Of a DNA stretch of 64,000 nucleotides, positions 3,202 to 62,321 are shown in pieces. Numbering within the stretch: position 1 is the stretch's first letter; every line of letters starts with the position of its first letter. A program made the position numbers and the translations under genes. The notes beneath the pieces are model-generated. The model had not been told where the DNA came from. It ran no database searches and saw only the letters and a program-made list of their open reading frames with translations. Origin of the DNA: Macrostomum lignano (taxonomy: Eukaryota); assembly GCA_002269645.1 (NCBI GenBank), contig NIVC01001600.1, positions 1 through 64,000 on the forward strand, read 5' to 3'.

Positions 3202-5392
3202 ATGAACGTTGAGTGTAACAGCAAACGCAGTGCCCGCGACACGGACTCACCTCCGATTGCGAACTCAAAAAAAGCCAATCACCGAGACTCAGCTGGTCCA
3301 AGCCGAAGATCCGAACCTAAGACCATGCTGTCTCCATCAAACGCGCCGCTGCCCGAGACGCCTCCGCAAACCGGCACGTCCAAAGGTGAGCGGGCTGAGC
3401 CTTTGCCTCCCCCTAAAAGGGACAGTTTAGAGGTTAGAAAAGAACATGGTAAAACAACTATAATACGAATTCCAATAGCTGACAAGACTGATGAGAAAAC
3501 TGTCACATTGCCAAACAACAGCAACATCTGCTACTACCCGGTTGCTCTTAAGAGCTCGGAAAATCAAATACTCAAAATACTAACCGACGAAATCCAGGCC
3601 AAAAGCCTTTCACCATCTCACAAAAGGCCGTCCTGAAGCCCGCAAAATTGTATGGTTCAGGCCAGAATATAGCTACGGGGAACTAAGATTCCGGCCAATG
3701 ACGACTGGCACCCGTTGGTTACTAGTCTTGCTACTTGGCTGAGCGCTGAGTTTGGTCTACCCGTCTTCAACTCATGCCTCGTAAATTATTACAAAGATGG
3801 GTCCGTGCACATTCCTTGGCACTCAGACGATGAAGACGAACTAGGGGCTAATCCGACCATAGCCTCTATCTCTATTGGTGCCGCACGTGACTTCCACTTA
3901 CGAACCAAAGGCTCCACCAACATCGCTTGGTCCCAAAAACTCGCCAGTGGTTCTCTGCTGGTAATGGGGGGTGCGACACAGGCACACTTCCAGCACGCCG
4001 TCCTTAAGGACCTAAAAGTCAAAGAGGCAAGAGTAAATCTAACATTCAGGCTAACGTATGATAGCAGAATCCCACCTGATCCTGCTCCTGCTTCTGCTCT
4101 TGCAAACCCTTGCGTGCAGCCTCTTGACAACGATATCACCTGCGATCTGGACGACGAAAATTCGGTTCGTCGCAGAGCAGAGCAAGAAGCCGAAAATCTG
4201 AAAAAGATCAGATCACGTTCGAACAGCTGCACTTCGGGGCACAAATCAAGCACTCAGCAATCTCAAACAGCTAACCAGCTCACTGGCTCTCAGCAGTCAG
4301 CCACTCAGTCTAGCACCAAACAACACACTCAATCAGGCACTCAGCAACATTCAACAAACACTCAGCAGGCACACTCTGTCAAATCAGCCATCAGGTACAC
4401 TACAGTCAGCCACTCAGTCTAGCACTCTGCCGAAGCACTCAGCAACTCTGCAACCACATGCAAACAATCAGCAGACACTTCAGACACTCAGCAATCAGGC
4501 GACCAAACTCAACCACCTAACAACTACAAGCTGCCAGCTACTCAGCAACCTAACATTCACCAATCTAACCAATCTAGCCAACTAAACTCTACAACTCTAA
4601 ACTACCATCCTAAAACTAATAATACTCAAAAATCTACTAACTCAGCACCTGTCATCTTTGAAATCGACCAAGAAGGCAAAGATCCCATCAAATTCGAATG
4701 GTTTCTGAAAACAAATTTCCCAGACGTTCGCATCAGGTCGGTTAAGGACCTATACCATAGCTCCGGCTACATCGTGATTCCAGATCACCCTAAGGACTTC
4801 AACACACTATTAACAGCTATTCTCAAAATAAATAAAATTAATAACCACGAAGTCACGCGACGCACAGCAGCCAAAAGGCCAATAAGACAAGGAGATGATC
4901 AGGCGCGTGCTCCACTAAAATCACCAACAACGTACTCGTTTATCGTAAAACATGTGCCAATCACCGTAGACGCACACATGCTAGCCAAACACTTGGCAGA
5001 CTCAGAGCAGCAACTACCAATTGACGGCGCTGTGCGCATTGTCTCTAGGGCAACTGGTGCACCTACTCCGCACATCCGCCTCTTCACTAAGAGCAAGGGC
5101 ACGATGGAAAGATGCATCCAGCATGGAGTCTACCTTGGTTACAGCAAATTTAAATGCGAAGAGTCTATTAATTTAGCTCCGGTAAAAGCAATCCAATGTA
5201 AAAAATGTCAGAGATTAGGGCATCATGAAAACAGATGCACAGCAACCTACAGGTGTAACAAATGTGCGGGAGATCACTATTCTGCAGACTGCCCGAAAGA
5301 AAGCAAATTTAAATGCGCAAACTGCGGCGAAAGAACACCCAGCTTACTCATATAGATGTAGTAAAGTAAAGAAGCGAACGAAATTGCCATTA
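3202..5392 (+). pseudogene. LINE ORF1 copy 1: AlkB dioxygenase + Q/S/T-rich linker + RRM-like + 3xCCHC (frameshifts near 3620, 4420, 5328)
   Basis: AlkB: PEARKIVWF..YSYGG, NSCLVNYYKDG, WHSDDE, HAV, RVNLTFR. C-terminal part: FIVKHVP, CKKCQRLGHHENRC, CNKCAGDHYSADC, CANCG-EH. Confidence 0.9.
3622..4050 (+). CDS. AlkB (ALKBH2/3-like 2OG-Fe(II) oxygenase) domain, copy 1
   Basis: HSD (3820-3828), distal H in HAV, RxNLTFR all present. Confidence 0.93.
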
Positions 5393-7975
5393 CCCGCCTG
5401 GATAGCCGATCGGTTGTCGTCGCGCCGTCGTCCGCATTGGTCCGCGTTTGGTGGTCGATTTCCGGACAAATGCAGCTTTTCGTCCGTATTCATCCGGTTT
5501 AAGCTGCCGGACAAAGTAGCGGGCCAGTTTCCGGATCAGAGCCGGACAAAGTGGTGATTTTTTTACTTAATTGGTCCATTTTAGTCCGGAATTATATCCG
5601 CTTGTTTACCCGGACAAAAACCGGATGAAGCGTCGGATGACTTTACGGATGACTAGCCGGATGAATTGTCACTGTCGTCCGAAAAGTCATCCGCATTTTA
5701 ATCCGGGCTGTCGCCCGCCTAACAACCGGACGAAGAGCGGATATGTTTCCGGGTGATAGTGGAGCACGTGGAATTGAATAGTGGAAAATGGCACCTTTCT
5801 CCTACTTGTATGCCCACAGTTTGTAACACATGTTCCAGAAACAGCAGCACAACGTGTTCTATTTCTTATGCTCCAAGTTCTACAGAAAAATATACTTCTC
5901 CGTATGACATTTCCCACGTTCTGATTTTGATGGAGACTTCGATGTTGTTCGATGCCTTCGCATCTTTTGCATGTGTGCAACACATTAGATAGTACACTAT
6001 GTTAGATAGGGATCATAGAGGTCTTGGAAACAGCGGGTATTGTTGGACAAAATTGGTCTCGTCCGAGTTGTTACTGAAATGCAGAAATTCAGAAACATGT
6101 CGTCCATTCTATACGTGGATAGATGAATAGGTCACACAGCAGATAGTGCTACAGTGAATATGCGCATCTAGACATCATAAACCAACCCAATCTCTTTCAG
6201 TACTGCACGACTCGCAAACTGCATGGACAATTCAGATTTACCGCGCGGTTACAGCGGAGGCAGTACATGCGAGAGTACATGCGGCAGCGTGCGTTGGCCA
6301 ATTCAAATAGTCGACAAGAAGGTTCGCGATCACCTCTGCGTCCAACCGCAGGAACTTCTGCAGATGTCGACTCCGGCGAAGTCCAGTCCGGCGGCGCAGG
6401 CACCAGTGGACTGCTGCAGTCGTCGCAGCTGCAAGCGGATCCGCCTCTACATCTACAGTATCTCGATCTCGAGATGAGCAGTCTGTATACCTGCCTATAG
6501 ACAATCCAGAGTCCGACGACGGTGGCGCACAGGCCGATGGCCGCAATGGGGACCCGGTGTCGAGCTCTGACAGCACTTCGGACGGGGATTCTTCCTCTAG
6601 TGGTGAGTCCCAGTCAGAGAGTTGGCTTATCGTGGATTGTGGATCCATCCCAATGGCTCATGTTTGATACTTTTGTGTTACCTGCACGTTGCACTCACAC
6701 TGTCCACCGAACACATGCGCACTACGCTCACCACACACAATATATTCCTCCCAGGTTCGCAGTCTGTTGACGGCCAGAGCACAGACTCCGACAACGACGA
6801 GGACGTCCCGGGGTTTCCAGGAGTCAATTGGCACGACGCTCTGCCCGTTTCGCTCGGAGAGGCGATTTGGGAGGTCAGCTCCTGCGCGAGGAACTGAACC
6901 TGACAGTTAGCGGGACGACAAGGCTGCTTTCACTACTGCACAGGCTAGTACCCGACAACCGCCTTCCTCAGCACGGACGAACATTGCGTGAAACTTTGAA
7001 GAAGAGGGGAACAATCTCGGGGTCGTCAACATGTTACACTGTCCGCAACGACTGTTATCTACATTCCGAGCAGCGCTGCGATCCAGGAAATTCTAATTGT
7101 GCGCACTGTACGTCGGAAAATGTGGCCAACTTCTGGTTATTCGACATACCTGCGCAGATCCGAACATTCGTTGAATCTCGCGGTCTTCTACAGAGCGTAA
7201 CATTTCCGATTGAACGGCTTGCACTGGACGAAGAGAAGCTGCACTTTGCCAACAGCGAACTGTACAAGTCGTTTCTCGAGAACATCGAACCCGAGACTCG
7301 GAGCGACCTTACATACACCATCTGTGCAGACGGATTTCCTCTTTTCTGCACTAGCAATGTCGAGGTGTGCCCCGTCTATCTGAGTATTAACGAAGTGCAC
7401 GAGCGGCTGAAGCTCCGATTCGTGATGAAGTGTGGCGTGTGGGCCGGCAAGAAAAAGGTCCATGCCGCCGCCTTTCTGCCAATCGTCGTAAATGCACTGA
7501 ATACTCTGCGCTTCGATGGTGTACAGTATATCGACAGCCTCGGGGTTCAGCGTCGATTGCATCTGCATCCGCTAATGGCGCTGTTCGACGCTCCAGCGAG
7601 AGCGGACGCTCTGTGCATGAAGCGTTTCTCGGCTATCTACGGATGCGAGAAGTGCTACATCCGGACATCATTGCATCCATCAGGCCATGGACGAGTCTAC
7701 GGCGTCGGGGTTACTGACGCGATGCTTAATCAGGCCAGACGTCTAGGATGCGTTCAGACTGTAGTGCGGTCGACCAGCGACACTCACACTCTCGCTGAGC
7801 AGCACGCACAGCAGGGTGGCGACATTCGGACTGACGTCCTCGGTGTCCGTGGCCTGTCACCGCTGTCTCGACTGCACGGGTTTGACTTTGTCCGCGGCTG
7901 TCCACCGTGTTTCCTGCACCAGTTGTGCTCCGGCCTGGTACGCAATATTTTGTACCAGCTGTTCCTCTGGTACGG
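5393..7975 (+). mobile_element. CACTA/EnSpm-like DNA transposon, left part (right end lost)
   Basis: Starts CCCGCC exactly where LINE ORF1 homology stops; dense CCGGAC/CCGGAT subterminal repeats 5460-5755; transposase downstream. Confidence 0.75.
6828..7975 (+). CDS. CACTA/EnSpm-type transposase (main exon, truncated by Gypsy remnant)
   Basis: ICADGFPLF..VCPVYLSINE, FDAPARA..KRFSAIYGCEKC, PPCFLHQLCSG motifs typical of animal EnSpm/Mirage-like transposases. Confidence 0.85.
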
Positions 7976-10039: not shown

Positions 10040-12069
10040 TCACGACACAACACTTAGCAACCAACAGCTTCTCAGTTGTAGATTCTCCACACCTGAGGAC
10101 CTAGATAAAGCGGTTGATCTGCTAAATCAGTGCATTCATGACACCATTGAGGATGTTGTACCCAACCGGGACCCTAGGGAGCAGCTTCCCCCAGATATTA
10201 TTAACAAAATTAAGCATAGGAGGAAAATTAGAAAATTATTCAAAAAACTAGAATAGACGACTTCAGAGTTCAAGCCAATCAAGCAGCTAAAGAAATACGA
10301 AATGCCATACGTATGCATAGATATAGGAAATTCGAAGATCTATGCCACAAAATTGCTAAAACTAGTTACAAAAAAAACCCAAAAAATTTTGGATTGACAT
10401 CAAAAAGATGACAGGAGAAAGGTCCAAAATGATCAACTATCCCCTTCTAGTCTACAAGGATTCGCATGCCGAGACTGAGGCAGAAAAAGCTTCACTCTTC
10501 AGCGACTTTCTAAAAGATCAAATGCAATCTCACCCCAACCAAGACTCGCTTATCTACGAAAAAGTCAGCAAGTACAAAGATCATGAGATCTTCAAACCCC
10601 ATAAAAATATAATCGCGGCACTTTCATACCATAAAGAGCACGCGAACCCGATTGATCCAGATAAAGAAGATATCGAAAGCGATATCCTAAACATTACTGA
10701 CCAGGACGTGCTCTGGGAGAGCAGAAAACTTAGGTCAGGAGGAGCTCCCGGTCCGGATAGAATTCCTAACATGGTTTTGAAATATGGTCTCAGCCCGGAC
10801 TCCATCAGAGTGCTCGCAAAAATTTACAACTCTAGTTTTCTCATAGGATACTTCCCTAAACAATGGAAAAAGGCCATCATCAAGATGATCCCTAAACCAA
10901 ACAAATCCAAAAATCTCGTGGAAAGCTATAGACCCATCAGCCTAACCTCCTGTGTTGGTAAACTTTACGAGAAGATTCTAGCTAAAAACCTTAGAATTAT
11001 CTTAGAAAACCTAGGAATTATTAATGAGGAACAATGTGCCTACAGATTCGATCACTGCACATATGACAATATAGTAAGACTCACCGACGATGTGCTGAAA
11101 ATGCTTCAGTTGAGGCAGTACACGTTGGGGGTCTTCTTTGATGTCAAAGGAGCCTTCGATGGAGTCTGGCTGGACTACCTTAAATATAAAATCTGGAAAA
11201 GTAAAATCCCGCACAACATGACACGAATTATAGTTGGAGGAGCCCGGGGCGAGGTCTTTCAGCCAACGGCGGGTGTCCCGCAGGGTGGGGTGCTCTCGCC
11301 CCTGCTCTTTATCATCTTCGCTAGCTCTATACCCAAGCCCACTGACAGCAAGGTCCGCTTTAGTCAGTTCGCTGACGACTTAGCAGTATGGGCCTCTGCC
11401 AGAAAATCCACTATGTCCGCTAAAAGGCTTAACTCATACTTCATTGTCCTCAAAAAGTGGCTTGACAATTTGGGCATAGTCATCAATCCCTCCAAAAGTA
11501 AAGCCATTTCCTTTTTCAAAGCTAATGGGAACAAAACAGGTCCAGACGATCCTCCAATTAAACTTGGACAAGACAAAATCAAGTACTATGATTCCGTCAC
11601 CTTCCTAGGGATGGTTCTTGACAAACAGCTTAACTTTAGGGCCCATATCGACAAGGTAGCTTGGTCTTCGACTGCCAAAATGGCTGCGCTAGCTAGGATG
11701 GCTAAGAACTCCAGGATTTCGCAACTGGCTCTTCGCCTCATCTATAGATCTTACATTGAGAGCACAATGACTTACGGCGCTCCAGTGCTCATCAATCTAC
11801 TGGCATCCCTTGTCAACAAGTTACAAATTCTGCAAAATAAGGCTCTTCGCCTCTCTATAGATGCTCCGCCTTATACTAAAATCACATACTTACACCAGGT
11901 CACCAAGATGCCTATGGTTAAGGATCGACTCCTCAATCTTGCTAAAAAATGGTACAAAAAAGCCCTGGAGAGTGAAATCCATGGGTTCAAAAATGACACC
12001 AAAGAATAGGCCAGACCTGGGTTCAGGGTCCCCTTTACTACTAAACTCAGACAGATTACGCAAATGTGA
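10040..12069 (+). pseudogene. LINE ORF2: post-endonuclease linker + reverse transcriptase (Jockey-like, no RNase H); APE missing
   Basis: APGPDRI, YRPISLTSCVGKLYEK, FFDVKGAFDGVW, GVPQGGVLSPLL, QFADD, TFLGMVLD. Linker FSTPEDLDK..RDPREQLP matches 63190-63295. 36-bp deletion and premature TAG at 12007-12009 relative to the 54-56 kb copy. Confidence 0.92.
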
Positions 12070-12900
12070 TTCAATTTATAACTCGAGCGCCTCTGTCCGG
12101 GGTCGGGAATACTTACGATTCTATGTAATGCTGTGCTAATTACTTGACATTCAAAGTACAGTACCAATCACACTCTGTTTTAACGTTTACACCCTCTCAC
12201 AGTATTATCTTTTATACTTCTCTAACATGTTTTACATTATTCACCCAAAATGCTGTTTATTGTGGGGCCAGGTCCACTACTTATAATTATCACTAAGAAA
12301 GGATATCTGAATGCTGAACTTACCAGTTGGGCTTGCTTTGTTGGGATGCTGTTGCGTCCGGTTTGCCGATTAACAAAATTTGCAAAACCCTCACCTGTGG
12401 GTAGGGACCTCTCTACTTACGGTATTCTCCAAGTCCTCCCAGGGAATCCTTCGTTTTCGTAAGGTTAACTAACATAGGCAGGTTCCTATATCATAGCCGT
12501 GTCTAGCTACTCTCAATAGTAGTGAAGAAGCTGGCCTCCATTTTTAAACCAAAACACTCAAAACATTACTGCTTTGTGATTCATTGTACATATTTACACC
12601 CCAATATTTGTTTTAGTTTTATCAATCATATTTATTTATATTTATTTGTTTTACTCAATACTTCAACCATTTGCTTTAAATTGACTCTATATTGATTAAT
12701 TGTACTCTATTATTTGTTTTAAGTTTTTAAATGGCATTATTGTATTATTTATTAGAAAATATTTGTTTTATTTCTCCAACAAAATACTAAATGTATCGCT
12801 CAAACTGGAAACTAAAACAAATTAGTTGCGTAAGAGCCCTCCCCAGGGCTGATGCGCAGGGCCCTTGATAGCCCCAACTTACCAAATGAAAAAAATGAAA
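12070..12900 (+). other. LINE 3' UTR with terminal hairpin (12835-12850) and (AAATG)n tail
   Basis: Colinear with the reverse complement of 54411-55200; ends ccaaatgaaaaaaatgaaa. Confidence 0.85.
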
Positions 12901-18714: not shown

Positions 18715-18842
18715 ATCTTATTCAATTCAATAATTCGGAACAGGTTGGCCACGGAGACAATCAATATTCGACCAAATCCTGGTGATGACATTGATCAGTC
18801 TTTTACCTGACTTGTTGTTTCAAAGAGAATTGGAAATTTATT

Positions 18843-19215: not shown

Positions 19216-19217
19216 CT

Positions 19218-22430: not shown

Positions 22431-23724
22431 GAAAATATTTCAAGACTTTTACTAATCCCTAATCAAATAAAATTAAGCCTTGCGGTCACTAAAGTTCTCA
22501 GCCAAGCCCATAATCCCAAGTGTTGAGGGAATAATTACGCTTTACCTGGCTCCGCTGCCCTGACGCTCCAGGTGAATCATTGGGCGCGATTAATGCCTTG
22601 AAATAAACTTTTTATAACGTGTAGCGCCAGTAGCAAAACTATAAATAAATAAACATTTTCTTGCTTCAAAAAGCAAGAAGTCCCCTCCCCTCCCGTCCGT
22701 CCCCTCCCCCAAGCCTTGCGCGCGCTGCCATCGTCCCGGCCGGTCTGTTTTCTGCTCTAAATTTGCTTCAAAACTACTCAGAGTAAGTTGATTGTAAATT
22801 CTATCTTCACTTTCTATTTTATTAAATTTATTTTTCTTCTCGATTTCCTCGGCCTATAGAATGTCTTAGGAACTTTTTTCTTTAGCTAGCTACCTGTCCC
22901 AGTCTCACCTGCCCTGAGACTCCCTCTCCCCTTCTTTGCTCTCTATTTATTTAATTTCGGGTTCTTAAGCTTTAGGGATCCTCTTCAAGGGTTGGGTCTA
23001 GGACGCGCTGTCCTCTGGTTTAGTTAAGTTATTACATTTCTTTCCTTTGTATTTTTTGCTCAATTCTTTGGCTTCGGCCTGGGGGAACCCCTGCTCTAAT
23101 TTTTTCTTAAATAGTCTCTTTTTGTGCATTTTTGCAAAATTAACTAGCAATTTGCATTTACACTATTTTTGATTCTAAGTAGTCTAAATTAGGTATTATT
23201 ATCTTTTCTTGAGTTAGCACATTAAAATTCTCTAAATTTTTTCTGATCTATTTCCTCTAATTTAGGAATTATTCTCTATTTGCCTACTTCTTAGCTCATT
23301 AGTCAGTAAGGGTTTTCTCGCTATTCTTTGCCTTCTTTATCTAAAATAATTATTTCGAACTATAATTACTTATATTTAAATTGCCGGTTTTCTTTTTCTT
23401 CTTCATTATTCTAAACGAGACAGTGTGTGCAAGGCTTGCGGACGTTATTAACCCGCTCTGACAATTGCTTGAACTGCTGACATTTACTTTGAACTGATTT
23501 ATTATATTAAATTGCTCTAAATTTATTTAGAACTGCCCCTGTTTTACTAGTTTTATAGCTGATTGGTCTCCCTGTTTTATATTGACCACTTATCTACCTC
23601 CATTAGAATATTGTTTTAATTAGTTAACTAGCATCGTCATGAGCACTATCAAAGAAACTGACATCACCGATAACGGGAAGAGGCCAGCGCGAGACACCTC
23701 GTCACCAGCTACCGCTGCTACTAC

Positions 23725-25978
23725 TTGTGGTGATCCAGCATAGCTAGCATAGGCTGCTCCTGGGATCCCCTCTTAGTCAGTTAGTGCTTGGGCTGCAGCA
23801 GTGGGAGCTGGGCATAGGGCTGTCCCTTCCTCCTCTTCCCTTGTGCAGGCTCAGGAGTGCAGCTGTCGCGGGACAGGGAGAGAAACTCTCTCCCCCTCTC
23901 CCCCTGGCGCAGTCTGCAATGGGCTAAAAATAGAAACATTAGTCAGTGGGATATTTCTCCCTTAGTACAGGCTTATTTAGTCAGCGGGAGTGAGAGCATA
24001 GCTCTCCGCCCGGGGTAGGCTCTCGTGGGGTCTTGGTTGCACTCCTTGCATGCGGCAACATGCAAGCAGTGTACCAGCAGGCCGTGCGGAGGCTGCATGA
24101 TGAGGCAGATGTCTTATGGGCATCTCCAAGATCGTTCCTGGCTCCGGGTAGTCCACGGAACTGCCATGGGATCTGCCACGGAACTGCCTCTGAGCTTCCC
24201 ATTGGCCCTGAGACCCCCGAATTTTAGTATAAATACAGAATAGGTGAAGGCCCAAAGAGACCATCCTCGTTCAGGAGACGATCTTCGTCCGCTTCGGAGA
24301 CCGCCTGCTTGGTTTCGAGCAAAGGCTAGATTCCTAGATGCTTTTCCTAGACGAACTAGCTTAGGCAGATCGCTAGACGTTTTTCCTAGGGATAACCTGC
24401 TAACAAACCTTTGTTGCAGCTGCCATTTGCTCAATAAGACTGCCGCAGGTCCTTGTGTCATCAGCCCGCCAGACCTTCAACACCGTCTGGACCTGGTCTC
24501 GTGGCCTACAACCTACACTGTTGGGCAACATCAATTGACGCACAGTACAGCTTAGGGCGTTTACTGCGACACCAGTGGAGTTATTAAACGATAATTTAGG
24601 ATCGGCCTGTGACCGTCATTCACATTAATAAACGTTTATCTGACTTGTGTTGTCTTATTTATTTTCTACTTATCAGTAGGCCTACCTAGGGATAACCTGT
24701 CGAGGATATCACTTGTAGACCTACAAGGTGGCAGCAACCCAACTACCAATACTCGGTTATTAACTAATTGTACTCTGTAGAGACTAAGAGGGGTTAATTC
24801 GGACCATAGTGCTAGACCACTCAGGCCAGCTACCGGCCGTGCTAGATAGCGAGGACAGACAGAGAAAGTAATAGGCAACAGCAGTAGTCACCAAGAGACG
24901 GGGATCCCCAAGGCCATTACATTGGTTACATTGGTGGGATCCACAAGGCAAAGAGCACAGCATTACACTGGTGGCAGCGGTGGGATATCAAGACCTACCC
25001 GACCACCCAGGGAAGTCCTTGTTCCATCTCGGCGAAAAAAGCAACGGCATTACATACTAAAAAGCCTAACTTGCGAGCCTCAGCTGGACCTGCCAACAAC
25101 AGAGCAACACCGGCCAAAAGGACATCTTTGCCTTGGTTTTGTCTCGCATAGAGACGACTAATCGCAGTCACTCCTGTGAAACTTGTCCCTGCCTGGCTGA
25201 AAGCTTGTAATGAGTGAGTAGGCTGGGTTGGAGGGTAATAGTGGATCGGGAAGGGCTGTGGGTAGCTGTATAGGAAGGCAGGCCTATACCTGTACCAAGG
25301 TGCTCTGACGGTATCCCTCAGGCGCCCTCTGAGCGTACAGCCAGCGACCCTATTAAAGCTGGAGTGTGCCAGAACCAGGACTGAGTCTGAGCAGGACGAG
25401 ACCGTTGGCACGGTCACTATAGAAATGGCGGGTTGGCGAAGCAAAGGGTGAAATAGTCCCGGCGAATAGCCCTCCTGCCGCTTCAAAGATAAGAGACTGT
25501 CTGGCAAGAGTACCCGGGGTTTAGTTGGGGGGAGGCTCCTTCGGGTTGCCACGGCCGTGGGGGCGGTCAATTGACCGGTTTTTGGCTTATCTAACCCTGG
25601 AGAAGGCACGGGCTTCCCTTATTGGTTCACTCAACCCCCTCTGGCCCCGGGGAGGTTTATGAATTGTACCCGGGGGTGGTGGGCGGTCGGCCCCAGCATG
25701 GTTGCCACGGCTCTAGGCCTTCGGGCCATCCCTAATAGGCTAAGGGGTCTATCTAACCTGGTTTTTGGGCACGGGCTCCTGACTGGTTCGTCGAACCGCT
25801 GTCACTGTCCCCCGGGGAGGTTTGGTTTTTATGATTCTGCCCTGTACAGTCCTCTATAGTCTAACTTGGCTTTTAGTGTACATAAGTACTCTCCCAATCT
25901 GGAACTCAAATATTTCTCTAGTGGCGTAAGAGCCTGCTCAATGGCTGAGGCGCCGTATTACTTATCTTAGTTAGTTAG
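23725..25978 (+). mobile_element. LTR-retrotransposon 5' fragment (LTR, PBS, untranslated leader; no gag/pol)
   Basis: TATAAAT near 24228, AATAAA near 24627, ...ATTACA-C-PBS at 24961-24986, then a GC-rich leader with internal repeats. Boundaries approximate. Confidence 0.6.
24969..24986 (+). promoter_or_regulatory. Primer binding site complementary to tRNA-Leu (AAG/UAG type) 3' end incl. CCA
   Basis: TGGTGGCAGCGGTGGGAT is the 18-nt reverse complement of AUCCCACCGCUGCCACCA, 1 nt after ...TACA. Confidence 0.85.
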
Positions 25979-26259
25979 TAAGGACATCTTTGCCTGATGT
26001 CTCTCCAGGATCAGCAGATGGCGGCTCTGCCTGCAGCCAGCCTCTGGCAGCGTGTTCTGACCTGAAATATGACATAAACAACTTGGCACTTTTAAGCATT
26101 CCCAAGCCAAACAGGACTAATGAAAAAACTGTAACTCTACTGCAAAACTGCAACATCACTTATGCGCCGAACGCGTTAAAAAGCTCAGAAACCACTCTCT
26201 TCAACATAATAATGAAAGACATCGCTCCAAGTGCCTACCACCACCACTCAAACGGAAAA

Positions 26260-26682
26260 CCGGAGGCCCGTCAGATCGCCTGGTTTGGGCCCAGTTACAC
26301 CTACGGTGGATCAAAAATCGAGGCCAATGACAACTGGCATGCTGCAATAGTCCGACTAGTCACGTGGCTCCACCTCGAATACAAACTGCCACTGTTCAAT
26401 TCCTGCCTAGTTAATTTTTATAAAGACGGCAACATCGGTATTCCATGGCACTCTGACGATGAAAAGGAACTTGGAGAGGATCCGATCATCGCCTCAGTGT
26501 CACTCGGAGCCGCCCGAGACTTTTAAGTTCGCTCAAAATCTTCTCCAACGAACATAGTATTTTCGCAAAAGCTAAGCAGCGGCAGCCTCTTAATAATGAG
26601 CGGTGGTACTCAGCGTTATCTACAACATACCGTACCAAAAGATCCTAGATGCAAGGAAATGCGAATTAACCTAACATTCCGA
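26260..26682 (+). CDS. AlkB (ALKBH2/3-like) domain, copy 2 (single nonsense codon)
   Basis: PEARQIAWFGPSYTYGG, NSCLVNFYKDG, WHSDDE, QHTVP, RINLTFR. Confidence 0.93.
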
Positions 26683-28270
26683 TTAACTAAAGACGACAGA
26701 ATCTCCGCCGTGGACACTCTGACGCCTAATCCGTGCGTCAGGTTCACTTCTGTTTCTGTTTCTGTTTCATGTGACCTGGACGACGAGGAATCCATCAGGC
26801 GCAAGGCAGAAGAGGAGGCCGCCAACTTAGAAAAAATTAAGCTAAATTCTACAAACAAGGACTTCAAAGCAAAATCAGGCAACAAAGTGGCAGACGCCTC
26901 CGAAGCACAGGCAGTCACAGCCCAAGCGAATCCTCAAGCATCAAGCAATCAAACCAAGGCATCAAGCAATCAAAACCTAGCAACACAGCAATCAAGCATT
27001 CAAGACACAGCTACTAAGCAAACTAATAACCAAGGCACTGAACAACAACCAAGCAACCAAAGCACCCAGCAACAAACAGGAAAAAGTAAACCGGCAGCCA
27101 GTATAGCTGACCAGGCAACCAACAACAACAAAGCTAACCAAGAAGAAAAAGAAAAAAAACGTAGACCGGCGGCCAGTACAGCCGACCAGGATCAGAACAG
27201 CAGTCAATCCAACTACAAGAAAATCACTCCTGTGATCTTTGAAACCGCACCCGAGGCTAAAGATCCAATTAAATTTGAATGGTTCTTGAAACAGAACTTC
27301 AAAAACACCAGGATCCAATCAGTTAAAGACCTGTACCATGGCGTTGGCTTCTGTGTATTCGCAATGGACGAAAAAGGCTTGAATGCTCTGCTCACAACAC
27401 CAATGGTTGAAACTGAGATCAACGGACAGACCGTCACCCGCAGACTGCCTAGAAAAAGGCCAATTAGACAAGGCGATGACGAAAACCGACCACCACTCAA
27501 ATCGCCACAAATATTATCCTTCATCGTAAAGAACGTGCCATTGGCAGTTGACGCATCTGAACTACCCAAGCATCTTCAAGATTCTATCAATCAGCTACCA
27601 ATCGACGGCGCCACTAGAATTATATCCAAACAAACCGGACGACCAACTCCACTAATTAGATTATTTACAAGAAGCAAGCCAACCCTAGAAAGATGCCTAG
27701 ACAAAGGGATATACCTGGGACATGTACTGTACAAGTGCGCGCCGTCACTCACAGCGCCATCAGTCCAAGAGGTGCGCTGCACGCGCTGCCAGGGCTTTGG
27801 TCATCAGCAATACCGGTGCACCAACAATCCAGTCTGCAACAAATGTGCTGATGAACACCACTCTGCAGAATGTCCTAAAATAAAAGAATTAAAATGTGCC
27901 AACTGCGGTGGAGAGCACACGTCGTATTCTCACAAATGCCCAGTAGCTATTAGGGCACATCGCCTGGCAACTGAAAGGGAGCGCGAGAGGGTGCACAGTC
28001 TACGACAACAGTATGACTATGACTGCTATCAGCAAAACTTACCAGAAGCCTTTCCGAGGCCGCAACAGTTCTCCTACTCTGCAGCAGCAAGTCGATCAGC
28101 TGTGACAAGCCAACTGCCTCCAAAGTACAACGCGTGCCCGGCTGGTCCCCCTGCAGCGGTCTCGGCGATGGCCTCTGCAGCGGTTGACCCGGCAACCGAG
28201 TCTGCATCCCACCCCGCGGCGGTCCAGGCGATGGCCTCCGCGGAGGTCGTCCCGGTACTGGCCCCTGCAG

Positions 28271-30565
28271 GGTAGTAAAAATTAGGTTTTAACTTATTTT
28301 TTGAGAAACAACTTTAAAATTTAATTAATTCATTTTCGATCTGATTTCTTTAATTTAAGATTAATTCTCATTCTGCCTACTTTTCGTTAAATAGTTAGTT
28401 ACAGGTTTTTCGCTATTCTTTACTCTTTATATTTAAAAATTTAACTCGATTACAATTTTGCCGGGTTTCTTTCACTTTCTTTTCTTTCAATCGAGACAGT
28501 GCGTGTGAGGCTTGTGGACGTATTTAACTGCTCTGACAACTGCTTTGAAGTGCCACTATCTACCACTTCATTTGAACTGCTCCATTTATTAACTGTTTTA
28601 CATTTTTTATTGAACTGCCCTAGTTTTACAAGTTCTGCATTCCGTTTTAAATTGCTGAACTGACTCCTAGTTTTACTTTGACTCTTTACCTCTAATAGCA
28701 TTATATTAATTAGTAAACTTACTCAGCATTGTCATGAGCACAATTAAAGAAGAAATGGAAGTCACTGACAACGGAAAGAGGCCAGCTCGAGACACTTCGT
28801 CGCCGGTTGTCGCTTCAAACAAAAAACCAATACTCGAGCCTCAGCAGGACCTGAAGACCATCCTGAAGAACATCCTTGCCTGAATCCTCTCCAAGGTCTG
28901 CAGATGGCCGCTCTGCTGGCAAGCAGCCTCAAACAGCGTATCCTGACCTGAAATATGATGCGACTGACATGGCACTCCTTAGCATTCCTAGGCCAAACAG
29001 AAGCAACGAGAAAACAGTTAACTTACTGCAAAATTGCAACATATTATTCAATTGCAACATACCTATGCACCCAATGCTCTAAACGGCTCCGAGACAGCTC
29101 TCTACAAGGCAATAATGAAAGGCATTGCACCTAGCGCATTCCACCACTGCACTAACGGAAAACCTGAGGCCCGTCAAATCGCATGGTTCGGGCCCAGTTA
29201 CTCCTACGGAGGTACTAGAATCGAAGCTAATGACAACTGGCACCCAATCATAGCTCGTCTTGTGACTTGGCTGCATTTAGAATTCAGGCTGCCACTTTTC
29301 AACTCATGTTTAATAAACTTTTACAAGGACGGCACTATTGGAATACCTTGGCATTCTGACGATGAAACAGAGCTCGGCGAAGACCCGGTAATTGCCTCTC
29401 TATCTCTAGGAGCCGCTCGTGACTTCCAGGTTCGCTCCAAATCATCACCGGCGAACATCATGTACTCACAAAAGCTTGGCAATGGCAACCTCCTGGTAAT
29501 AAGTGGTGCCACCCAGCGCCTTCTGCAGCACTCAGTGCCAAGGGATCCAAAGTGCAAAGAGATGAGGATAAATCTTACGTTCCGCCATACCAAGGACAAT
29601 AGAATTCCTGCCGCTGACGACGCTCTGCCGCCCAACCCGTGCGTCAGGTTCACTCAAAACGCGATATCCATCACTTGTGACCTAGACGATGAGGACTGTC
29701 AAACGCAGGGCAGAAGAGGAGGCAGTCAATCTGGAGAGAGTCAGGCAAAACTCTGCAAGCAAAAGCAACCAGGACCAAGTGGATAGGAAGTCACGCAGTC
29801 AAGATCAAACAGCAAAGCAACCAGGCAAACAGGACATCAAGCAACAGCCAAGCAATCAGGACACGAGGCACCAACTAGATCTGCAGCCAACAGGCAACAT
29901 GAGCAACCAGCAACAAAGTCAAAATCAGCAATGTGGGCCGGCGGCCAGTGCGGCCAGCCAGGCTAAAAAAGAAAATACCAGTAAACCGGCGGCCAGTACA
30001 GCCGACCAGGCAGAAGTAAAAACCAGTAAACCGGCGGTCAGTATAGCCGACCAGGATACTAACTCTGAAAACAATAGACCGGTGGCAAGTACAGCCGACC
30101 AGGACACCTCAAATCAGCCAAGCAATCAACACACTGAATCAACTCAACAGAAGAATCACAGGAAAAAAGCACCAGTGGTCTTTGAAGTGCCTCCTGAGGC
30201 AAAGGATCCAATAAAATTCGAATGGTTCCTCAAGAAGAATTTCCCAGAGGTGAGGATTCAATCTGTCAAAGACTTATACCACGGAGTCGGCTACTGCGTC
30301 TTTGCCACCAATGAGCAAGACATGAACACTCTACTAACGAGACCACTCAAAGAGCAAGAAATTAACTGTCAAACAGTCACGCGCAGACTTCCGAGAAAAA
30401 GGCCAGTCCATCAGGGTGACGACAACACCAACCGAAACCCATTGAAGACTCCAGCAATTCATACCTTCATAGTCAAAAATGTGCCTCTAGCTGTGGATGT
30501 GGCTGAAATTCCGAAATGTTTGCAAGACTCCGAAGATCAGCTTCCCATAGATGGCGCAACACTAG
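28271..30565 (+). mobile_element. AlkB-bearing LINE copy 3 (partial 5' UTR + 3'-truncated ORF1), fused head-to-tail to copy 2
   Basis: UTR homologous to 23180-23638; ORF1 start MSTIKEEMEVTDNGKRPARDTSSP at 28734; frameshifts near 29045 and 29695; truncated after LPIDGAT. Confidence 0.88.
29163..29585 (+). CDS. AlkB (ALKBH2/3-like) domain, copy 3, uninterrupted
   Basis: PEARQIAWFGPSYSYGG, NSCLINFYKDG, WHSDDE, QHSVP, RINLTFR. Confidence 0.93.
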
Positions 30566-33830: not shown

Positions 33831-33891
33831 AAATGAAACTTACTTTTATTCGATTTCGAATCATTAGCAGGAAACCTATCGAAATGGAGGA

Positions 33892-33927
33892 TTAGGGTTA
33901 GGGTTAGGGTTAGGGTTAGGGTTAGGG
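33892..33927 (+). repeat. Interstitial telomeric repeat (TTAGGG)6
   Basis: Six perfect units. Confidence 0.95.
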
Positions 33928-54410: not shown

Positions 54411-56233
54411 TTTTTTTTCATTTCATTTGGTAAGTAGGGGCTATCAAGGGGCCCTGCGCGTCAGCCCTGGGAAGGGCTATTACGCAATTAATTTATTTTT
54501 GGTTTCTAGTCTGAAAGATACATTGAGTATTTTATTCGAGTTTGAGGAAGTAAAACAAATATTTTCTAATACAATAATGACATTCTAAAAAATTAAAACA
54601 AATAAAAGGGTTCAACTAATCAATAGAGAGACAATTTAAAACAAATGATTGAATTTGAGTAAAACAGATAAATATGATTAGTAAACCTAAAACAAATATT
54701 GACGTGTAAATATATACAGTGAACCACAAAGCAAAAAAATTATTTTAGGTGAATTGGTTAATAAAAAATGGAGGCCAGATTCTTTACTACTAAAGAGAGT
54801 AGGTAGTCGCCACTGTGAAATAGGATCCTGCCGAAGTTTGTCAACCTTACGAAAACTAAGGATTCCCTGGGAGGACTAAGAGAATGTCGTAAGTATAGAG
54901 GTCCCTGCCCGCAGGGGAGAGTTTTGCAAACATGTTCGAATCGGCTAACCAGACAGCTGCACCCCAACAGAGCAAGCCCAACCGGTAAGTCTAACGTTCA
55001 GATATTTAGTCTTAATAATACTAATAGCTAGTGGACCTGGCTCCACAATAAACAGTATTTTGGGTGTATAGTGTAAAAACATGCTTGAGAAAGAGACTAA
55101 AAAAGTAATACTGTGAGAGGGTATAAACGTAAAAACAGGGTGAGATTAGTATTGTACTTTGAATGACAAGTGGTAAGCATAGCATTAGTATACCCGACCC
55201 CGGACTGAGGTGCTCGAGTTTTAGATAGAGTCATTTTAGCGTTATTCATCTCGTAATTTGTCTGAGTTTAGTAGTAAAGGGGACCCTGAATCCTGGCCTG
55301 GCCCATTCTTTGGTGTCATTCTTGAACCCATGGATTTCACTCTCCAGGGCTTTTTTGTACCATTTTTTAGCATGATAGAGGAGTCGATCCTGAACCATGG
55401 GCATCTTTGTGACCTGGTGTAAGTATGTGATTTTAGTATAAGGCGGAGCATCTAAAGAGAGGCGAAGAGCCTTATTCTGCAGAATTTGTAACTTGTTGAC
55501 AAGGGATGCCAGTAGATTGATGAGTACTGGAGCGCCGTAAGTCATTGTGCTCTCAATGTAAGATCTATATATGAGGCGAAGAGCCAGTTGTGAAATCCTG
55601 GAGTTTTTCGCTATCCTAGTTAGCGCAGCCATTTTGGCAGTGGAGGACCCAGCTACCTTGTCGATATGGGCCCTAAAGTTAAGCTGTTTGTCAAGAACCA
55701 TCCCTAGGAAGGTGACGGAATCATAGTACTTGATTTTGTCCTGTCCAAGTTTAATTGGAGGATCGTCTGGACCTGTTTTGTTCCCATTAGCTTTGAAAAA
55801 GGAAATGGCTTTACTTTTGGAGGGATTGATGACAATGCCCAAATTGTCAAGCCACTTTTTGAGGACAATGAAGTAGGAGTTAAGCCTTTTAGCGGACATA
55901 GTGGATTTTCTGGCGGAGGCCCATACTGCTAAGTCGTCAGCGAATTGACTAAAGCGGACCTTGCTGTCAGTAGGCTTGGGTATAGAGCTGGCGAAGATGA
56001 TAAAGAGCAGAGGCGAGAGCACCCCACCCTGCGGGACACCCGCCGCAGGCTGAAAGACCCCGCCCCGGGCTCCACCAACCACTAGCTCCACGGATCTGTC
56101 ATCCAGATAATTTGCTATAATGCGTGTCATGTTGTGCGGGATTTTACTTTTCCAGATTTTATATTTAAGGTAGTCCAGCCAGACTCCATCAAAGGCTCCT
56201 TTGACATCAAAGAAGACTCCCAACGTGTACTGC
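54411..56233 (-). mobile_element. 5'-truncated copy of the same LINE family (RT C-half + 3' UTR + tail)
   Basis: TSD GCAAAATATCTATT at 54399-54412 and 56232-56245 (12-14 bp allowing for microhomology); ORF nearly identical to the 10408-12009 protein. Confidence 0.95.
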
Positions 56234-61467: not shown

Positions 61468-61823
61468 ATTTTCGATTAGAATATTAATTATATGTGTAAA
61501 AGAGTTTTTGAGATCTACATAGCATTTATGGAATGGAATAACTATTCCATTTAGTTTCATAAGCAATTTTGCTCTTTTTCCTTTTTTTTTATGTTATCAT
61601 TTTCATGAAATTATTGTGTAAAAATATGCTGTACTTCTGTTTGTACTACTTTTCATTTTTAAAAAACAAATTCATGTTACTGTTATTGTTTGCTGTTTTT
61701 TCCAGATACCATTCGTCACTTTAAGATGTAGGTTTTTAATGCATTTTTGAATTATAAAAACAGTGAAAGTTTATATTTTTTGCTGAGCAACTGGGTACTA
61801 GTGATAGGATAGATAGTCAGTTC

Positions 61824-62321
61824 TTGGCCGAGACTTTTGGTGTGCCGGGGCCACTGTCCTACGTCGACATGACAAGACCAAGACCAAGGCCTACTCTCGG
61901 CCCCATTGTCTACTCCAATCGTGCCGCTGCCGCTGCCGCTGCTGCTGCCCAACCGAACATGGTGACCAATCAGACCGCGCTTCCTGCTGACAACGCCGTG
62001 CCGGTAATGAGCAAGCAGTCTGCACCACCGACCAGCAGCGCTGAGCCAGCCCAAGCTGAACCAATAACGGACAATGCTGCCCCCAACGTTGTAACCGGTG
62101 AGAGGGGCTTCACGCAGAATGATGTGCTCGGGGTGGTACTTGAGGCACTCAACCGGATTATGGAGATCGAACCGGGGCGTCTGCTCACTGCCTGGGAAGC
62201 AAGCCAGCTTGCTATTCAGGTAGTGACAGAGGTCCTGGCGACCTTCTTGAATCCCGGAAGGGTGCCTGCTGCCAGGGCGGGTGAAGCCAAAGCCACTTTG
62301 GTGAGCGGAGGCGGATCCTAA
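61824..62321 (+). pseudogene. Probable LINE ORF1 C-terminus (5'-truncated)
   Basis: Lies directly upstream of ORF2; has an LSYVDMTR motif and Ala/Pro-rich tract like the post-knuckle FSYSAAASR region of copy 2. Confidence 0.55.

What the first reader, a model, noticed from the sequence alone, without database searches (positions are those of the whole stretch)
23639..28270. LINE retrotransposon ORF1 fused to an AlkB nucleic-acid demethylase (best-preserved copy)
Seen: one reading frame (apart from one TAA and an N-terminal insertion) runs ALKBH2/3-type AlkB with the complete HSD..H iron triad and RINLTFR 2OG motif, a Q/S/N linker, an RRM-like domain and three CCHC knuckles. The same architecture occurs three times in the window. 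Established: ALKBH2/3 and bacterial AlkB remove m1A/m3C from DNA/RNA; these lesions block base pairing and stall reverse transcriptase; some plant RNA virus replicases carry AlkB. Described LINE ORF1 add-ons I know are esterase, PHD and similar; I know of no characterised AlkB-ORF1 fusion, but cannot exclude database entries. Inference: the element carries its own RNA/cDNA demethylase to repair or erase methyl marks on its template, a possible counter-defence against epitranscriptomic silencing.
Basis: partly seen in the sequence, partly recalled or inferred. Interest (0 to 1): 0.95.

Follow-up and report, generated by a model that had tools for sequence, protein, structure and literature searches.

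The report
LINE retrotransposon ORF1 carrying AlkB demethylase
A family of flatworm LINE retrotransposons has an ALKBH3-type nucleic-acid demethylase fused in frame to its RNA-binding ORF1 protein, which suggests that methylated bases such as m1A and m3C limit reverse transcription enough for the element to carry its own eraser.

Summary
Window 23639-28272 (+) reads, in one frame, an N-terminal leader, an AlkB dioxygenase domain (Pfam PF13532, E 1e-27; HxD..H and RxNLTFR intact), a Q/A/S/N-rich linker, two tandem RRM folds and three Cys/His knuckles. It is broken by one TAA and by two insertions, not one. Its tail is cut off by the 5' end of the next copy, so this copy has no ORF2. Two more copies (3202-5400, 28734-30561) and a fourth 5'-truncated fragment (61815-63312) lie in the window.

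It is a LINE ORF1. The fourth fragment joins the ORF1 tail to an endonuclease ORF2. A Macrostomum lignano contig (L007) and SRA-assembly contigs (L003, L005, L009) carry the same fusion directly upstream of APE+RT ORF2s, with fully intact 757-962 aa ORF1s. The RRM-knuckle module matches Jockey-type "X-element" ORF1 proteins.

The catalytic residues are invariant in all eight family members aligned. AlkB is the most constrained part of ORF1.

Function is inferred: an ORF1p-tethered m1A/m3C demethylase that cleans the element's RNA or cDNA. AlkB is already known in plant RNA viruses and in orchid Gypsy elements. I found no report of it in LINEs. I rate it a new variant of a known kind, interest about 0.72.

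The parts
23179..23638 (+). Copy 2: 5' UTR. The 5' terminus reads GTAGTCTAAATTAGGT.
   Evidence: About 69-78% identical to copy 3's 28272-28733. The similarity starts at the same motif in both copies.
23639..23722 (+). Copy 2: start of ORF1 (MSTIKETDITDNGKRPARDTSSPATAAT).
   Evidence: Homologous starts are at copy 3 (28734) and copy 1 (3202).
23723..25061 (.). Insertion A (about 1.34 kb) that interrupts ORF1. Its identity is unknown and its boundaries are approximate.
   Evidence: Alignment of the junctions with copy 3.
25062..25133 (+). Copy 2: 72-bp ORF1 segment stranded between the two insertions.
   Evidence: Aligns to copy 3 at about 28825-28880.
25134..25979 (.). Insertion B (846 bp), flanked by a 16-bp target duplication AAGGACATCTTTGCCT (25118-25133 and 25980-25995).
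25980..26241 (+). Copy 2: ORF1 N-terminal leader and the first strands of the AlkB fold.
   Evidence: The AF2 model covers this stretch.
26242..26682 (+). Copy 2: AlkB (2OG-FeII_Oxy_2) core. H154/D156 at 26449-26457, H213 at 26626-26628, R225/R231 at 26662-26682. In-frame TAA at 26524-26526; copy 3 has CAA/Gln at this codon.
   Evidence: Pfam E 1.1e-27. PDB ALKBH3 E 7e-27. AF2 pLDDT 91; Foldseek best match ALKBH3-ssDNA, target-normalised TM 0.88. Residue coordinates.
26683..27213 (+). Copy 2: conserved CDLDDE/RRKAEEEAxNL segment, then the Q/A/S/N-rich low-complexity linker.
   Evidence: Highest nonsynonymous divergence in the ORF, pN 0.41-0.54.
27232..27444 (+). Copy 2: RRM fold 1 (beta-alpha-beta-beta-alpha-beta).
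   Evidence: AF2 pLDDT 82. Foldseek top hits are tandem RRMs from HuR, Pub1 and NONO, E about 1e-6.
27514..27744 (+). Copy 2: RRM fold 2.
27778..27939 (+). Copy 2: three Cys/His zinc knuckles.
   Evidence: Pattern match. Near-invariant Cys/His columns in 13 relatives. The module hits X-element ORF1 proteins at E 3e-6 in a database of 5.8e9 proteins.
27940..28272 (+). Copy 2: the beginning of the ORF1 C-terminal tail, cut at 28272 by copy 3.
   Evidence: 31% identical to P0002 aa 453-602. Junction shown.
28272..30561 (+). Copy 3: 5' UTR, ATG at 28734, AlkB, linker, RRM1 and part of RRM2. Frameshifts near 28875, 29050 and 29698. Truncated before the knuckles.
   Evidence: Pfam PF13532 E 3.9e-27.
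3202..5400 (+). Copy 1 (a different subfamily, 44% aa identity to copy 2): full AlkB-linker-RRM-RRM-knuckle ORF1. It has two frameshifts (3604, 3680), one in-frame stop (4420-4422) and further frameshifts after 5328. It is truncated near 5400.
61815..62321 (+). Copy 4 (5'-truncated): ORF1 C-terminal tail.
   Evidence: 45% identical to M. lignano P0002 aa 516-693, E 5e-22.
62440..63312 (+). Copy 4: the ORF2 N-terminus with the AP-endonuclease domain, 118 nt downstream of the ORF1 stop.
   Evidence: Pfam Exo_endo_phos_2 E 4.7e-11. 43% identical to the ORF2 of L003.
10083..12891 (+). 5'-truncated ORF2 (RT) fragment of the same LINE clade. It is not physically linked to copy 1.
   Evidence: RVT_1 E 3e-35. 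36% identical over 541 aa to L003 ORF2 and 43% to the L007 RT.
54421..56233 (-). Second RT fragment, 86% nucleotide identity to 11115-12891.

Best explanation
The region is a dead copy of a non-LTR (LINE) retrotransposon of the Jockey-type ORF1 group. Its ORF1 protein has an ALKBH3-like Fe(II)/2-oxoglutarate dioxygenase fused in frame at the N-terminus. A flexible Q/S/N-rich linker joins it to the usual nucleic-acid-binding module of two RRMs and three zinc knuckles.

Shown here: the architecture; its linkage to an APE+RT ORF2; intact copies elsewhere; invariant catalytic residues; and purifying selection that is strongest on AlkB.

Inferred: in active copies ORF1p coats the element's own RNA, as in other LINEs. 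This tethers the demethylase to that RNA. The demethylase oxidatively removes N1-methyladenine, N3-methylcytosine and similar lesions from the single-stranded RNA template, and possibly from the first-strand cDNA. Those bases cannot form Watson-Crick pairs and they stall reverse transcriptases. Removing them should raise the yield and fidelity of target-primed reverse transcription. The AlkB module was added to a pre-existing RRM-RRM-knuckle ORF1, because AlkB-less sister LINEs exist.

The confidence of 0.5 is for this specific mechanism. I give about 0.9 to the broader statement that AlkB is a selected, functional part of a LINE ORF1p.
For: AlkB identity: Pfam E 1e-27; ALKBH3 E 7e-27. The AF2 model has pLDDT 91, and its best PDB match is ALKBH3 bound to ssDNA (target-normalised TM 0.88, rmsd 1.8 A). 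ALKBH2 scores 0.83 and E. coli AlkB 0.65. ALKBH5 and FTO are not in the top 50.

Catalytic H, D, H, R and R are invariant in 8 family members that share only 30-65% identity.

Constraint: pN for AlkB is 0.107 (copy 2 vs 3) and 0.25 (copy 1 vs 2). The RRM-knuckle module gives 0.18 and 0.30, and the linker 0.41 and 0.54. Synonymous sites are saturated, pS 0.73-0.88.

LINE membership: L003 has an intact 843-aa fused ORF1 plus a 948-aa ORF2 with Exo_endo_phos_2 and RVT_1. L005 and L009 have a fused ORF1 followed at once by an APE ORF2. M. lignano L007 has AlkB, RRM/knuckles, APE and RT in order. Window copy 4 joins the ORF1 tail to an APE ORF2.

ORF1 module: two RRM folds. It hits 'nucleic-acid-binding protein from transposon X-element', and one such relative sits upstream of APE and RT. 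An AlkB-less sister LINE is L008.

Established knowledge, not tested here: ALKBH3 demethylates m1A and m3C in ssDNA and RNA; these lesions block RT, which is why AlkB treatment is used in tRNA sequencing; LINE ORF1p binds its own RNA in cis.
Against: No biochemical activity, substrate or expression data exist for this protein. All four window copies are defective, and none of the three ORF1-bearing copies is followed by an ORF2. Activity therefore rests on intact copies in assemblies of unknown organism and unknown library type (DNA or RNA). Substrate preference (m1A/m3C versus m6A or other marks; RNA versus DNA) is read from fold similarity only. The TE AlkBs form their own clade outside ALKBH3 with weak support (bootstrap 43%), so their specificity may have shifted. 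Whether m1A or m3C occurs on LINE RNA in flatworms is unknown.
Confidence: 0.5

Rival explanations
1. Epitranscriptomic counter-defence. The domain erases a regulatory mark (m6A, or reader-recognised m1A) that the host places on retroelement RNA to trigger decay, sequestration or chromatin silencing. On this view it does not repair RT-blocking lesions.
For: The AlkB ORF of orchid Ty3/Gypsy elements demethylates m6A RNA in vitro (PMC9289625). That paper also summarises reports that m6A modulates ERV and L1 RNA. The fusion to RNA-binding domains and the invariant catalytic residues fit this reading as well as they fit repair.
Against: By sequence and fold the domain is ALKBH2/3-type. It is not the ALKBH5, FTO or ALKBH9/10 type that erases m6A. 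No m6A-specific features were seen. The nearest non-TE relatives are annotated as alkylation-repair AlkBs.
Confidence: 0.2
2. DNA-level repair. The domain removes 3-methylcytosine from element DNA or from integration intermediates. DNA methyltransferases generate this lesion as an off-target product when they methylate transposons.
For: M. lignano is reported to retain DNMT1 and DNMT3 together with ALKB2, and DNMTs introduce 3mC (review PMC9246332). ALKBH2 and ALKBH3 repair 3mC in DNA. The best structural matches are DNA-bound ALKBH3 and ALKBH2.
Against: The domain is fused to an RNA-chaperone-type ORF1p, not to ORF2 or a chromatin-binding module. A benefit to the element from repairing already integrated copies is hard to see. 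The ALKBH3 match is slightly better than the dsDNA-specialised ALKBH2 match.
Confidence: 0.1
3. Passenger or decaying capture. A LINE recently transduced part of a host ALKBH3-like gene. The domain has no role in the element's life cycle.
For: All copies in this window are pseudogenised.
Against: The fusion is kept in at least three divergent Macrostomum subfamilies (44-57% aa identity) and in intact 757-962 aa ORFs at 30-38% identity from other samples. Catalytic residues are invariant, and AlkB is the most constrained ORF1 segment while synonymous sites are saturated. The TE AlkBs do not nest inside animal ALKBH3.
Confidence: 0.03
4. Not a transposon. It is a multi-copy host gene family that encodes an AlkB-RRM-knuckle RNA repair protein.
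For: UniProt lists the M. lignano relatives only as 'Fe2OG dioxygenase domain-containing protein'. No ORF2 follows copies 1-3 in the window.
Against: ORF2 (APE+RT) lies directly downstream in L003, L005, L009, L007 and window copy 4. The copies share a defined 5' end. They are degenerate, nested and 5'-truncated, as LINE insertions are. The module is homologous to LINE ORF1 proteins.
Confidence: 0.02

Closest known systems
Human ALKBH3 (PDB 8jnk, 8jnr, 2iuw), ALKBH2, and short bacterial AlkB proteins annotated as alkylation-repair dioxygenases
   Same: Same double-stranded beta-helix fold (target-normalised TM 0.88, rmsd 1.8 A, about 31% identity). Same HxD..H iron triad and Rx5R 2OG-binding motif. 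Same WxGxxxYxYSG and NSxLxNxY motifs.
   Different: Here the domain is not a free-standing repair enzyme. It is the N-terminal module of a retrotransposon ORF1p. The TE sequences form their own clade with weak support, with signatures WFGPxYxY and FNSCLxNFY. Substrate is untested.
Jockey-type LINE ORF1 proteins with RRM plus CCHC knuckles (for example Drosophila X-element 'nucleic-acid-binding protein'; the RRM+CCHC class of ORF1p in published ORF1 classifications, cited from my own knowledge)
   Same: Tandem RRM folds followed by three Cys/His knuckles, encoded upstream of an APE+RT ORF2.
   Different: An extra roughly 230-aa AlkB domain plus a linker of 100-200 aa at the N-terminus. The accessory ORF1 modules I know of are esterase, PHD and coiled coil (own knowledge), not a dioxygenase. 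The AlkB-less sister LINE L008 shows the ancestral state.
AlkB ORF of orchid (Phalaenopsis) Ty3/Gypsy LTR retrotransposons (PMC9289625)
   Same: A retrotransposon that encodes its own AlkB-family dioxygenase. An epitranscriptomic host-TE conflict is proposed there as well.
   Different: That case is an LTR element in a plant. The domain is ALKBH5-like and sits in a separate additional ORF. m6A demethylation was shown in vitro. Here it is a LINE in an animal, the domain is ALKBH3-like, it is fused in frame to ORF1p, and activity is untested.
AlkB domains inside replicase polyproteins of plant (+)RNA viruses (flexiviruses, closteroviruses)
   Same: An AlkB domain embedded in a protein of a genetic parasite whose RNA must be copied by a polymerase. 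The model matches these structurally at E 1e-11 to 1e-9 (vitivirus, ampelovirus and closterovirus replicases).
   Different: Those are fused to methyltransferase, helicase and RdRp modules, and the template is copied into RNA. Here the domain is fused to an RNA chaperone, and the template is reverse-transcribed.

Membership tests
AlkB family of Fe(II)/2OG dioxygenases (ALKBH2/3-like subgroup) | Significant match to the family profile above the curated threshold | tested here: met
   PF13532: 97.9 bits against a cutoff of 31.2, E 1.1e-27. Copy 3 gives E 3.9e-27.
AlkB family of Fe(II)/2OG dioxygenases (ALKBH2/3-like subgroup) | HxD...H iron-binding triad and the Rx5R 2-oxoglutarate/substrate motif | tested here: met
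   H154, D156, H213, R225 and R231 are present and invariant in 8 family members. They are also invariant across the 83-sequence alignment.
AlkB family of Fe(II)/2OG dioxygenases (ALKBH2/3-like subgroup) | Double-stranded beta-helix fold closest to ALKBH3 and ALKBH2 rather than to other AlkB homologues | tested here: met
   AF2 pLDDT 91, pTM 0.88. Foldseek target-normalised TM: ALKBH3 0.88, ALKBH2 0.83, E. coli AlkB 0.65, ALKBH6 0.67.
AlkB family of Fe(II)/2OG dioxygenases (ALKBH2/3-like subgroup) | Oxidative demethylation of m1A or m3C in nucleic acid | not testable with these tools
   Needs an enzyme assay.
AlkB family of Fe(II)/2OG dioxygenases (ALKBH2/3-like subgroup) | Orthology to animal ALKBH3 | tested here: inconclusive
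   In the NJ tree the TE AlkBs form a separate clade outside the ALKBH3 plus bacterial group, but with only 43% bootstrap. Bit scores to bacterial AlkBs (up to 116) and to animal ALKBH3 (about 100) are similar.
Non-LTR (LINE) retrotransposon with Jockey-type ORF1 | ORF1 with RRM fold(s) and CCHC-type knuckles, homologous to known LINE ORF1p | tested here: met
   Two RRM folds. Three knuckles. Hits to X-element ORF1 proteins at E 3e-6. Pfam zf-CCHC itself is not significant on this copy.
Non-LTR (LINE) retrotransposon with Jockey-type ORF1 | ORF2 with AP-endonuclease and reverse transcriptase directly downstream of ORF1 | tested here: met
   Met for the family in L003, L005, L009, L007 and window copy 4. 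Not met for the flagged copy itself, which is cut at 28272.
Non-LTR (LINE) retrotransposon with Jockey-type ORF1 | Multiple dispersed copies, including 5'-truncated ones, with a shared 5' terminus in full-length copies | tested here: met
   Four ORF1-bearing copies and two RT fragments are in the window. Copy 4 is 5'-truncated. Copies 2 and 3 start at the same motif.
Non-LTR (LINE) retrotransposon with Jockey-type ORF1 | 3' tail (poly(A) or simple repeat) and target-site duplications flanking a complete insertion | tested here: inconclusive
   No complete insertion is present in the window. The 3' regions of L003 and L007 show no clear tail.
Non-LTR (LINE) retrotransposon with Jockey-type ORF1 | Placement of the RT in a named LINE clade by phylogeny | not tested
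   No reference RT set (Repbase or RTclass1) was available. The only indication is that ORF1 relatives are named after the Jockey-clade X-element.

The most novel reading that the evidence does not exclude
The AlkB module is a portable accessory cassette that unrelated retroelement classes in flatworms have acquired or exchanged. It occurs in LINE ORF1 and also in the upstream ORF of a Penelope-like element (L006), whose AlkB nests inside the LINE AlkB clade. This would mean that base methylation of single-stranded nucleic acid is a general barrier to reverse transcription, and a previously unrecognised one, that retroelements counter with their own eraser. The methylation could be m1A or m3C damage, host-installed marks, or DNMT-generated 3mC.
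Probability: 0.3. Interest if true: 0.85.

Novelty: new variant of a known kind. Interest (0 to 1): 0.72.

Why it matters
LINE ORF1 proteins are regarded as RNA chaperones with few enzymatic add-ons. A conserved, selected nucleic-acid demethylase in ORF1p would be natural-history evidence that methylated bases on a retroelement's template limit retrotransposition.

It makes that idea directly testable. Intact ORFs are available (P0138-P0141). Macrostomum lignano is a transgenic-capable model that also retains DNMT1 and DNMT3.

It extends the theme of parasites carrying AlkB from plant RNA viruses and one plant LTR lineage to animal non-LTR elements, and probably to Penelope-like elements.

It also warns that AlkB or 'ALKB2' presence calls in flatworm genomes can come from transposons. 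A practical spin-off would be an RNA-tethered demethylase that helps reverse transcriptases read modified templates.

Tried and rejected
1. I looked for an ORF2 directly downstream of copies 1-3 and found none. Copy 1 ends near 5400 in unrelated sequence, followed by a transposase-like ORF and LTR-retrotransposon gag/PR/IN fragments. The RT at 10083-12891 is a separate 5'-truncated copy.
2. Exact-sequence contig look-ups for the window ORF, P0001 and P0002 found nothing on record.
3. My first idea that the nucleotide-recognition hairpin is strongly shortened in the TE AlkBs was wrong. The alignment shows only about a 2-residue difference.
The tree was rooted on methyltransferase-AlkB fusions instead, so deep branching is unreliable.
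5. Ka/Ks ratios could not be computed properly because synonymous sites are saturated. I report only pN and pS.
6. Pfam does not detect RRM or zf-CCHC in this copy. Structure prediction and pattern conservation were needed.
7. The organism behind the Logan runs (SRR316283xx, SRR316284xx, SRR19430222) could not be determined. Only the PLE shares nucleotide similarity with the window.
8. No clear 3' tail or TSD of the element was found.
9. The first homology search with the full protein was swamped by the low-complexity linker and returned only 12 hits from 8000 candidates.

Full report
**1. What is at 23639-28270**

The + strand frame that begins with ATG at 23639 (MSTIKETDITDNGKRPARDTSSP...) is interrupted and resumes at 25990. 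It then stays open to 28272, apart from one TAA at 26524-26526.

The translated product has these parts:
- An AlkB domain: Pfam PF13532, 97.9 bits against a cutoff of 31.2, E 1.1e-27.
- A conserved CDLDDE/RRKAEEEAxNL segment.
- A low-complexity linker that is 18% Q, 16% A, 14% S and 12% N.
- A 250-aa module ending in three Cys/His knuckles: CTRCQGFGHQQYRC, CNKCADEHHSAEC and CANCGGEHTSYSHKC at nt 27778-27939.

The iron triad is H154 and D156 (WHSDDE) with H213 (LQH). The 2OG motif is R225 and R231 (RINLTFR). All are present.

A PDB sequence search gives human ALKBH3 at E 7e-27 and ALKBH2 at E 4e-15. An AlphaFold2 model built on an 83-sequence alignment has pLDDT 91 and pTM 0.88. It superposes best on ALKBH3 bound to ssDNA (target-normalised TM 0.88, rmsd 1.8 A). 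ALKBH2 follows at 0.83, with E. coli AlkB (0.65) and ALKBH6 (0.67) well behind.

An AlphaFold2 model of the C-terminal module has pLDDT 82. It shows two consecutive beta-alpha-beta-beta-alpha-beta units. Its best PDB matches are tandem RRMs from HuR, Pub1, NONO and hnRNP A1, at E about 1e-6.

Pfam does not call RRM or zf-CCHC on this copy. The knuckles rest on the Cys/His pattern, on near-invariant Cys/His columns in 13 relatives, and on homology to P0149, whose knuckles hit zf-CCHC at 1.9e-8.

**2. Anatomy and state of the copies**

tblastn with the fused protein finds three copies.

Copy 2 is the flagged one.
- It has a 460-nt 5' UTR (23179-23638) that aligns with 28272-28733 of copy 3. Both begin with GTAGT(C/A)(T/A)AAATTAGGT.
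- Its 'N-terminal insertion' is really two insertions. Insertion A is about 23723-25061. Insertion B is 25134-25979 and has a 16-bp target duplication. A 72-bp ORF segment lies between them.
- Its ORF does not end naturally. The TAG TAA at 28273 belongs to the 5' terminus of copy 3, which cuts off the ORF1 C-terminal tail. Copy 2 therefore has no ORF2.

Copy 3 (28272-30561) has three frameshifts and stops before the knuckles.

Copy 1 (3202 to about 5400) belongs to another subfamily with 44% aa identity. It has two frameshifts and a stop, and is truncated just after the third knuckle.

Region 61815-62321 encodes the ORF1 C-terminal tail, 45% identical to M. lignano protein P0002 aa 516-693 (E 5e-22). 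An ORF with the AP-endonuclease domain starts 118 nt downstream, at 62440-63312 (Exo_endo_phos_2, E 4.7e-11; 43% identical to the ORF2 of L003).

Two RT fragments of the same clade lie at 10083-12891 (+) and 54421-56233 (-).

The window as a whole is a mosaic of transposon fragments.

**3. Is it a LINE ORF1?**

Yes, on five lines of evidence.

(a) The RRM-knuckle module hits 'nucleic-acid-binding protein from transposon X-element' proteins of a spider, at E 3e-6 against 5.8e9 sequences. One of these, P0016, sits upstream of APE and RT sequences.

(b) An exhaustive phmmer search of 1.84e9 representative proteins found intact fused proteins of 757-962 aa: P0138, P0139, P0140 and P0141. They are 35-38% identical to the query and have the same order of AlkB, linker, RRM-RRM, knuckles and tail.

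(c) Their contigs carry the ORF2.
- L003 has ORF1 at 1752-4283 and a 948-aa ORF2 at 4710-7556 with Exo_endo_phos_2 and RVT_1.
- L005 and L009 have an APE-containing ORF2 that starts 1-2 nt after the ORF1 stop.

(d) In the Macrostomum lignano assembly (L007, NIVC01002030.1) a third subfamily shows the full order: AlkB 10430-11098, RRM/knuckles 11533-12218, APE 12761-13910 and RT 14221-15496.

(e) Window copy 4 links the ORF1 tail to ORF2 inside the window.

An AlkB-less sister LINE exists. L008 has a P0149 ORF1 with RRM-RRM-CCHC and an ORF2 33% identical to that of L003. The AlkB is therefore an N-terminal addition to a conventional ORF1.

The only named database relatives of the AlkB-bearing proteins are M. 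lignano 'Fe2OG dioxygenase domain-containing' proteins. I infer from this that the window comes from Macrostomum or a close relative.

**4. Is the domain functional in the family?**

The five catalytic residues are invariant across eight members that share 30-65% identity. The AlkB segment holds most of the invariant columns of the whole ORF1 alignment.

Between window copies, synonymous sites are saturated (pS 0.73-0.88). Nonsynonymous differences are lowest in AlkB and highest in the linker:

| Segment | pN, copy 2 vs 3 | pN, copy 1 vs 2 |
|---|---|---|
| AlkB | 0.107 | 0.25 |
| RRM-knuckle | 0.18 | 0.30 |
| Linker | 0.41 | 0.54 |

The divergence between subfamilies thus accumulated under purifying selection that was strongest on AlkB. 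This argues against a passenger domain.

The same 757-aa ORF1 (P0138) was assembled identically from four sequencing runs.

**5. Origin of the domain**

Outside the family, the best matches are roughly 200-aa bacterial AlkB proteins (E 1e-28 to 1e-23) and animal ALKBH3 (E about 1e-23).

A neighbour-joining tree of a 140-column alignment puts all TE-borne AlkBs in one clade outside the ALKBH3 plus bacterial group. Bootstrap support is only 43%. The origin is unresolved.

The clade also contains the AlkB of P0285. This is a 1012-aa ORF directly upstream of an RT plus GIY-YIG ORF, a probable Penelope-like element (L006).

**6. Mechanism**

Shown: an ALKBH3-like, apparently catalytically competent dioxygenase is covalently joined to the nucleic-acid-binding ORF1p of a LINE.

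Established elsewhere and not tested here:
- ALKBH3 removes m1A and m3C from ssDNA and RNA.
- These bases block base pairing and stall reverse transcriptases.
- LINE ORF1p coats the RNA that encoded it.

Inference: ORF1p delivers the demethylase in cis to the element's RNP. There it clears RT-blocking methyl lesions from the RNA template, or from single-stranded cDNA, and so improves target-primed reverse transcription. I give this specific mechanism about 0.5. I give about 0.9 to the broader statement that AlkB is a selected, functional part of this ORF1p.

Rivals:
- Erasure of regulatory m6A or m1A as a counter-defence (0.2). The orchid Gypsy AlkB demethylates m6A (PMC9289625), but the fold here is ALKBH2/3-type.
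- Repair of DNMT-generated 3mC in DNA (0.1). M. lignano keeps DNMT1/3 and ALKB2 according to PMC9246332.
- Passenger domain (0.03).
- Host gene family (0.02, refuted by the ORF2 linkage).

**7. Comparison with the known, and novelty**

AlkB domains are known in plant RNA-virus replicases. The model matches vitivirus, ampelovirus and closterovirus replicases structurally. An AlkB ORF is known in orchid Ty3/Gypsy elements.

Six full-text searches found no report of AlkB in a LINE or a Penelope-like element. Repbase and Dfam could not be queried.

I therefore rate this a new variant of a known kind. It is a conventional Jockey-type LINE with an ORF1 accessory enzyme not previously described. Equivalently, it is the first animal, non-LTR instance of TE-encoded AlkB.

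I score 0.72.

Noticed in passing
L006:2120-7398 (Logan SRR19430222); compare window 34445-36091: A 1012-aa ORF with an AlkB domain (aa 530-665, Pfam E 5e-31) lies directly upstream of an ORF with RT and GIY-YIG motifs, a probable Penelope-like element. The Pfam hits to RT and GIY-YIG are weak. Its AlkB nests within the LINE AlkB clade. The window has a related PLE RT (70% nt, 50-69% aa identity) with no AlkB ORF upstream.
   Followed up: partly
window 28272 junction; L007:15590-16451 versus L007:9127-10000: Head-to-tail junctions. The exact 5' end of copy 3 abuts the ORF1 tail of copy 2. In M. lignano L007 the 870-nt 5' UTR of a second copy starts about 60 nt after the first copy's ORF2. These could be nested insertions or template-switch chimeras made during reverse transcription.
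   Followed up: partly
L008 (JGI metagenome 3300009537): 673-5561: A sister LINE with an RRM-RRM-CCHC ORF1 (P0149) that lacks AlkB, plus a 926-aa APE+RT ORF2 33% identical to the ORF2 of the AlkB-bearing L003. It shows the likely ancestral ORF1.
   Followed up: partly
window 33593-33895 (+): This ORF reads ...GWIHAVYTPEDSVAFGGNFL... and gives a weak Jumonji helical-domain hit (PF17811, E 0.0045). It looks like an exon or fragment of a JmjC histone-demethylase gene, another 2OG oxygenase, among the transposons.
   Followed up: no
window 25134-25979 and 23723-25061: Two unidentified insertions sit inside the copy 2 ORF1. The 846-bp one has a perfect 16-bp target duplication (AAGGACATCTTTGCCT). 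Neither has another copy in the window.
   Followed up: partly
window 6828-9770: A GC-rich block (54-61% GC) with a transposase-like ORF (6828-8066, +; no Pfam hit). On the minus strand it reads as LTR-retrotransposon gag, CCHC, protease and integrase fragments (8294-9770). It separates copy 1 from the unrelated RT fragment.
   Followed up: no
window 17023-18715; 18843-19216; 36240-36640: Tandem repeats: a unit of about 563 bp in three copies at 98-99% identity, and shorter arrays with periods of about 90 bp and about 69 bp.
   Followed up: no
window 32110-32703 (-), 38303-38803 (+), 42459-43160 (+), 47854-49614 (+): Other transposon remnants: a Harbinger-type DDE_Tnp_4/HTH_Tnp_4 (weak hits), a mariner-type HTH_48, an LTR-retroelement Integrase_H2C2, and a DUF1258/Transposase_21 ORF of 586 aa.
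   Followed up: no
Literature (PMC9246332), no window coordinates: M. lignano is cited as retaining ALKB2 together with DNMT1 and DNMT3. Because multi-copy LINE-borne ALKBH2/3-like domains exist in this genome, presence or absence calls for host ALKB2/3 in flatworms could be confounded by transposon copies.
   Followed up: no
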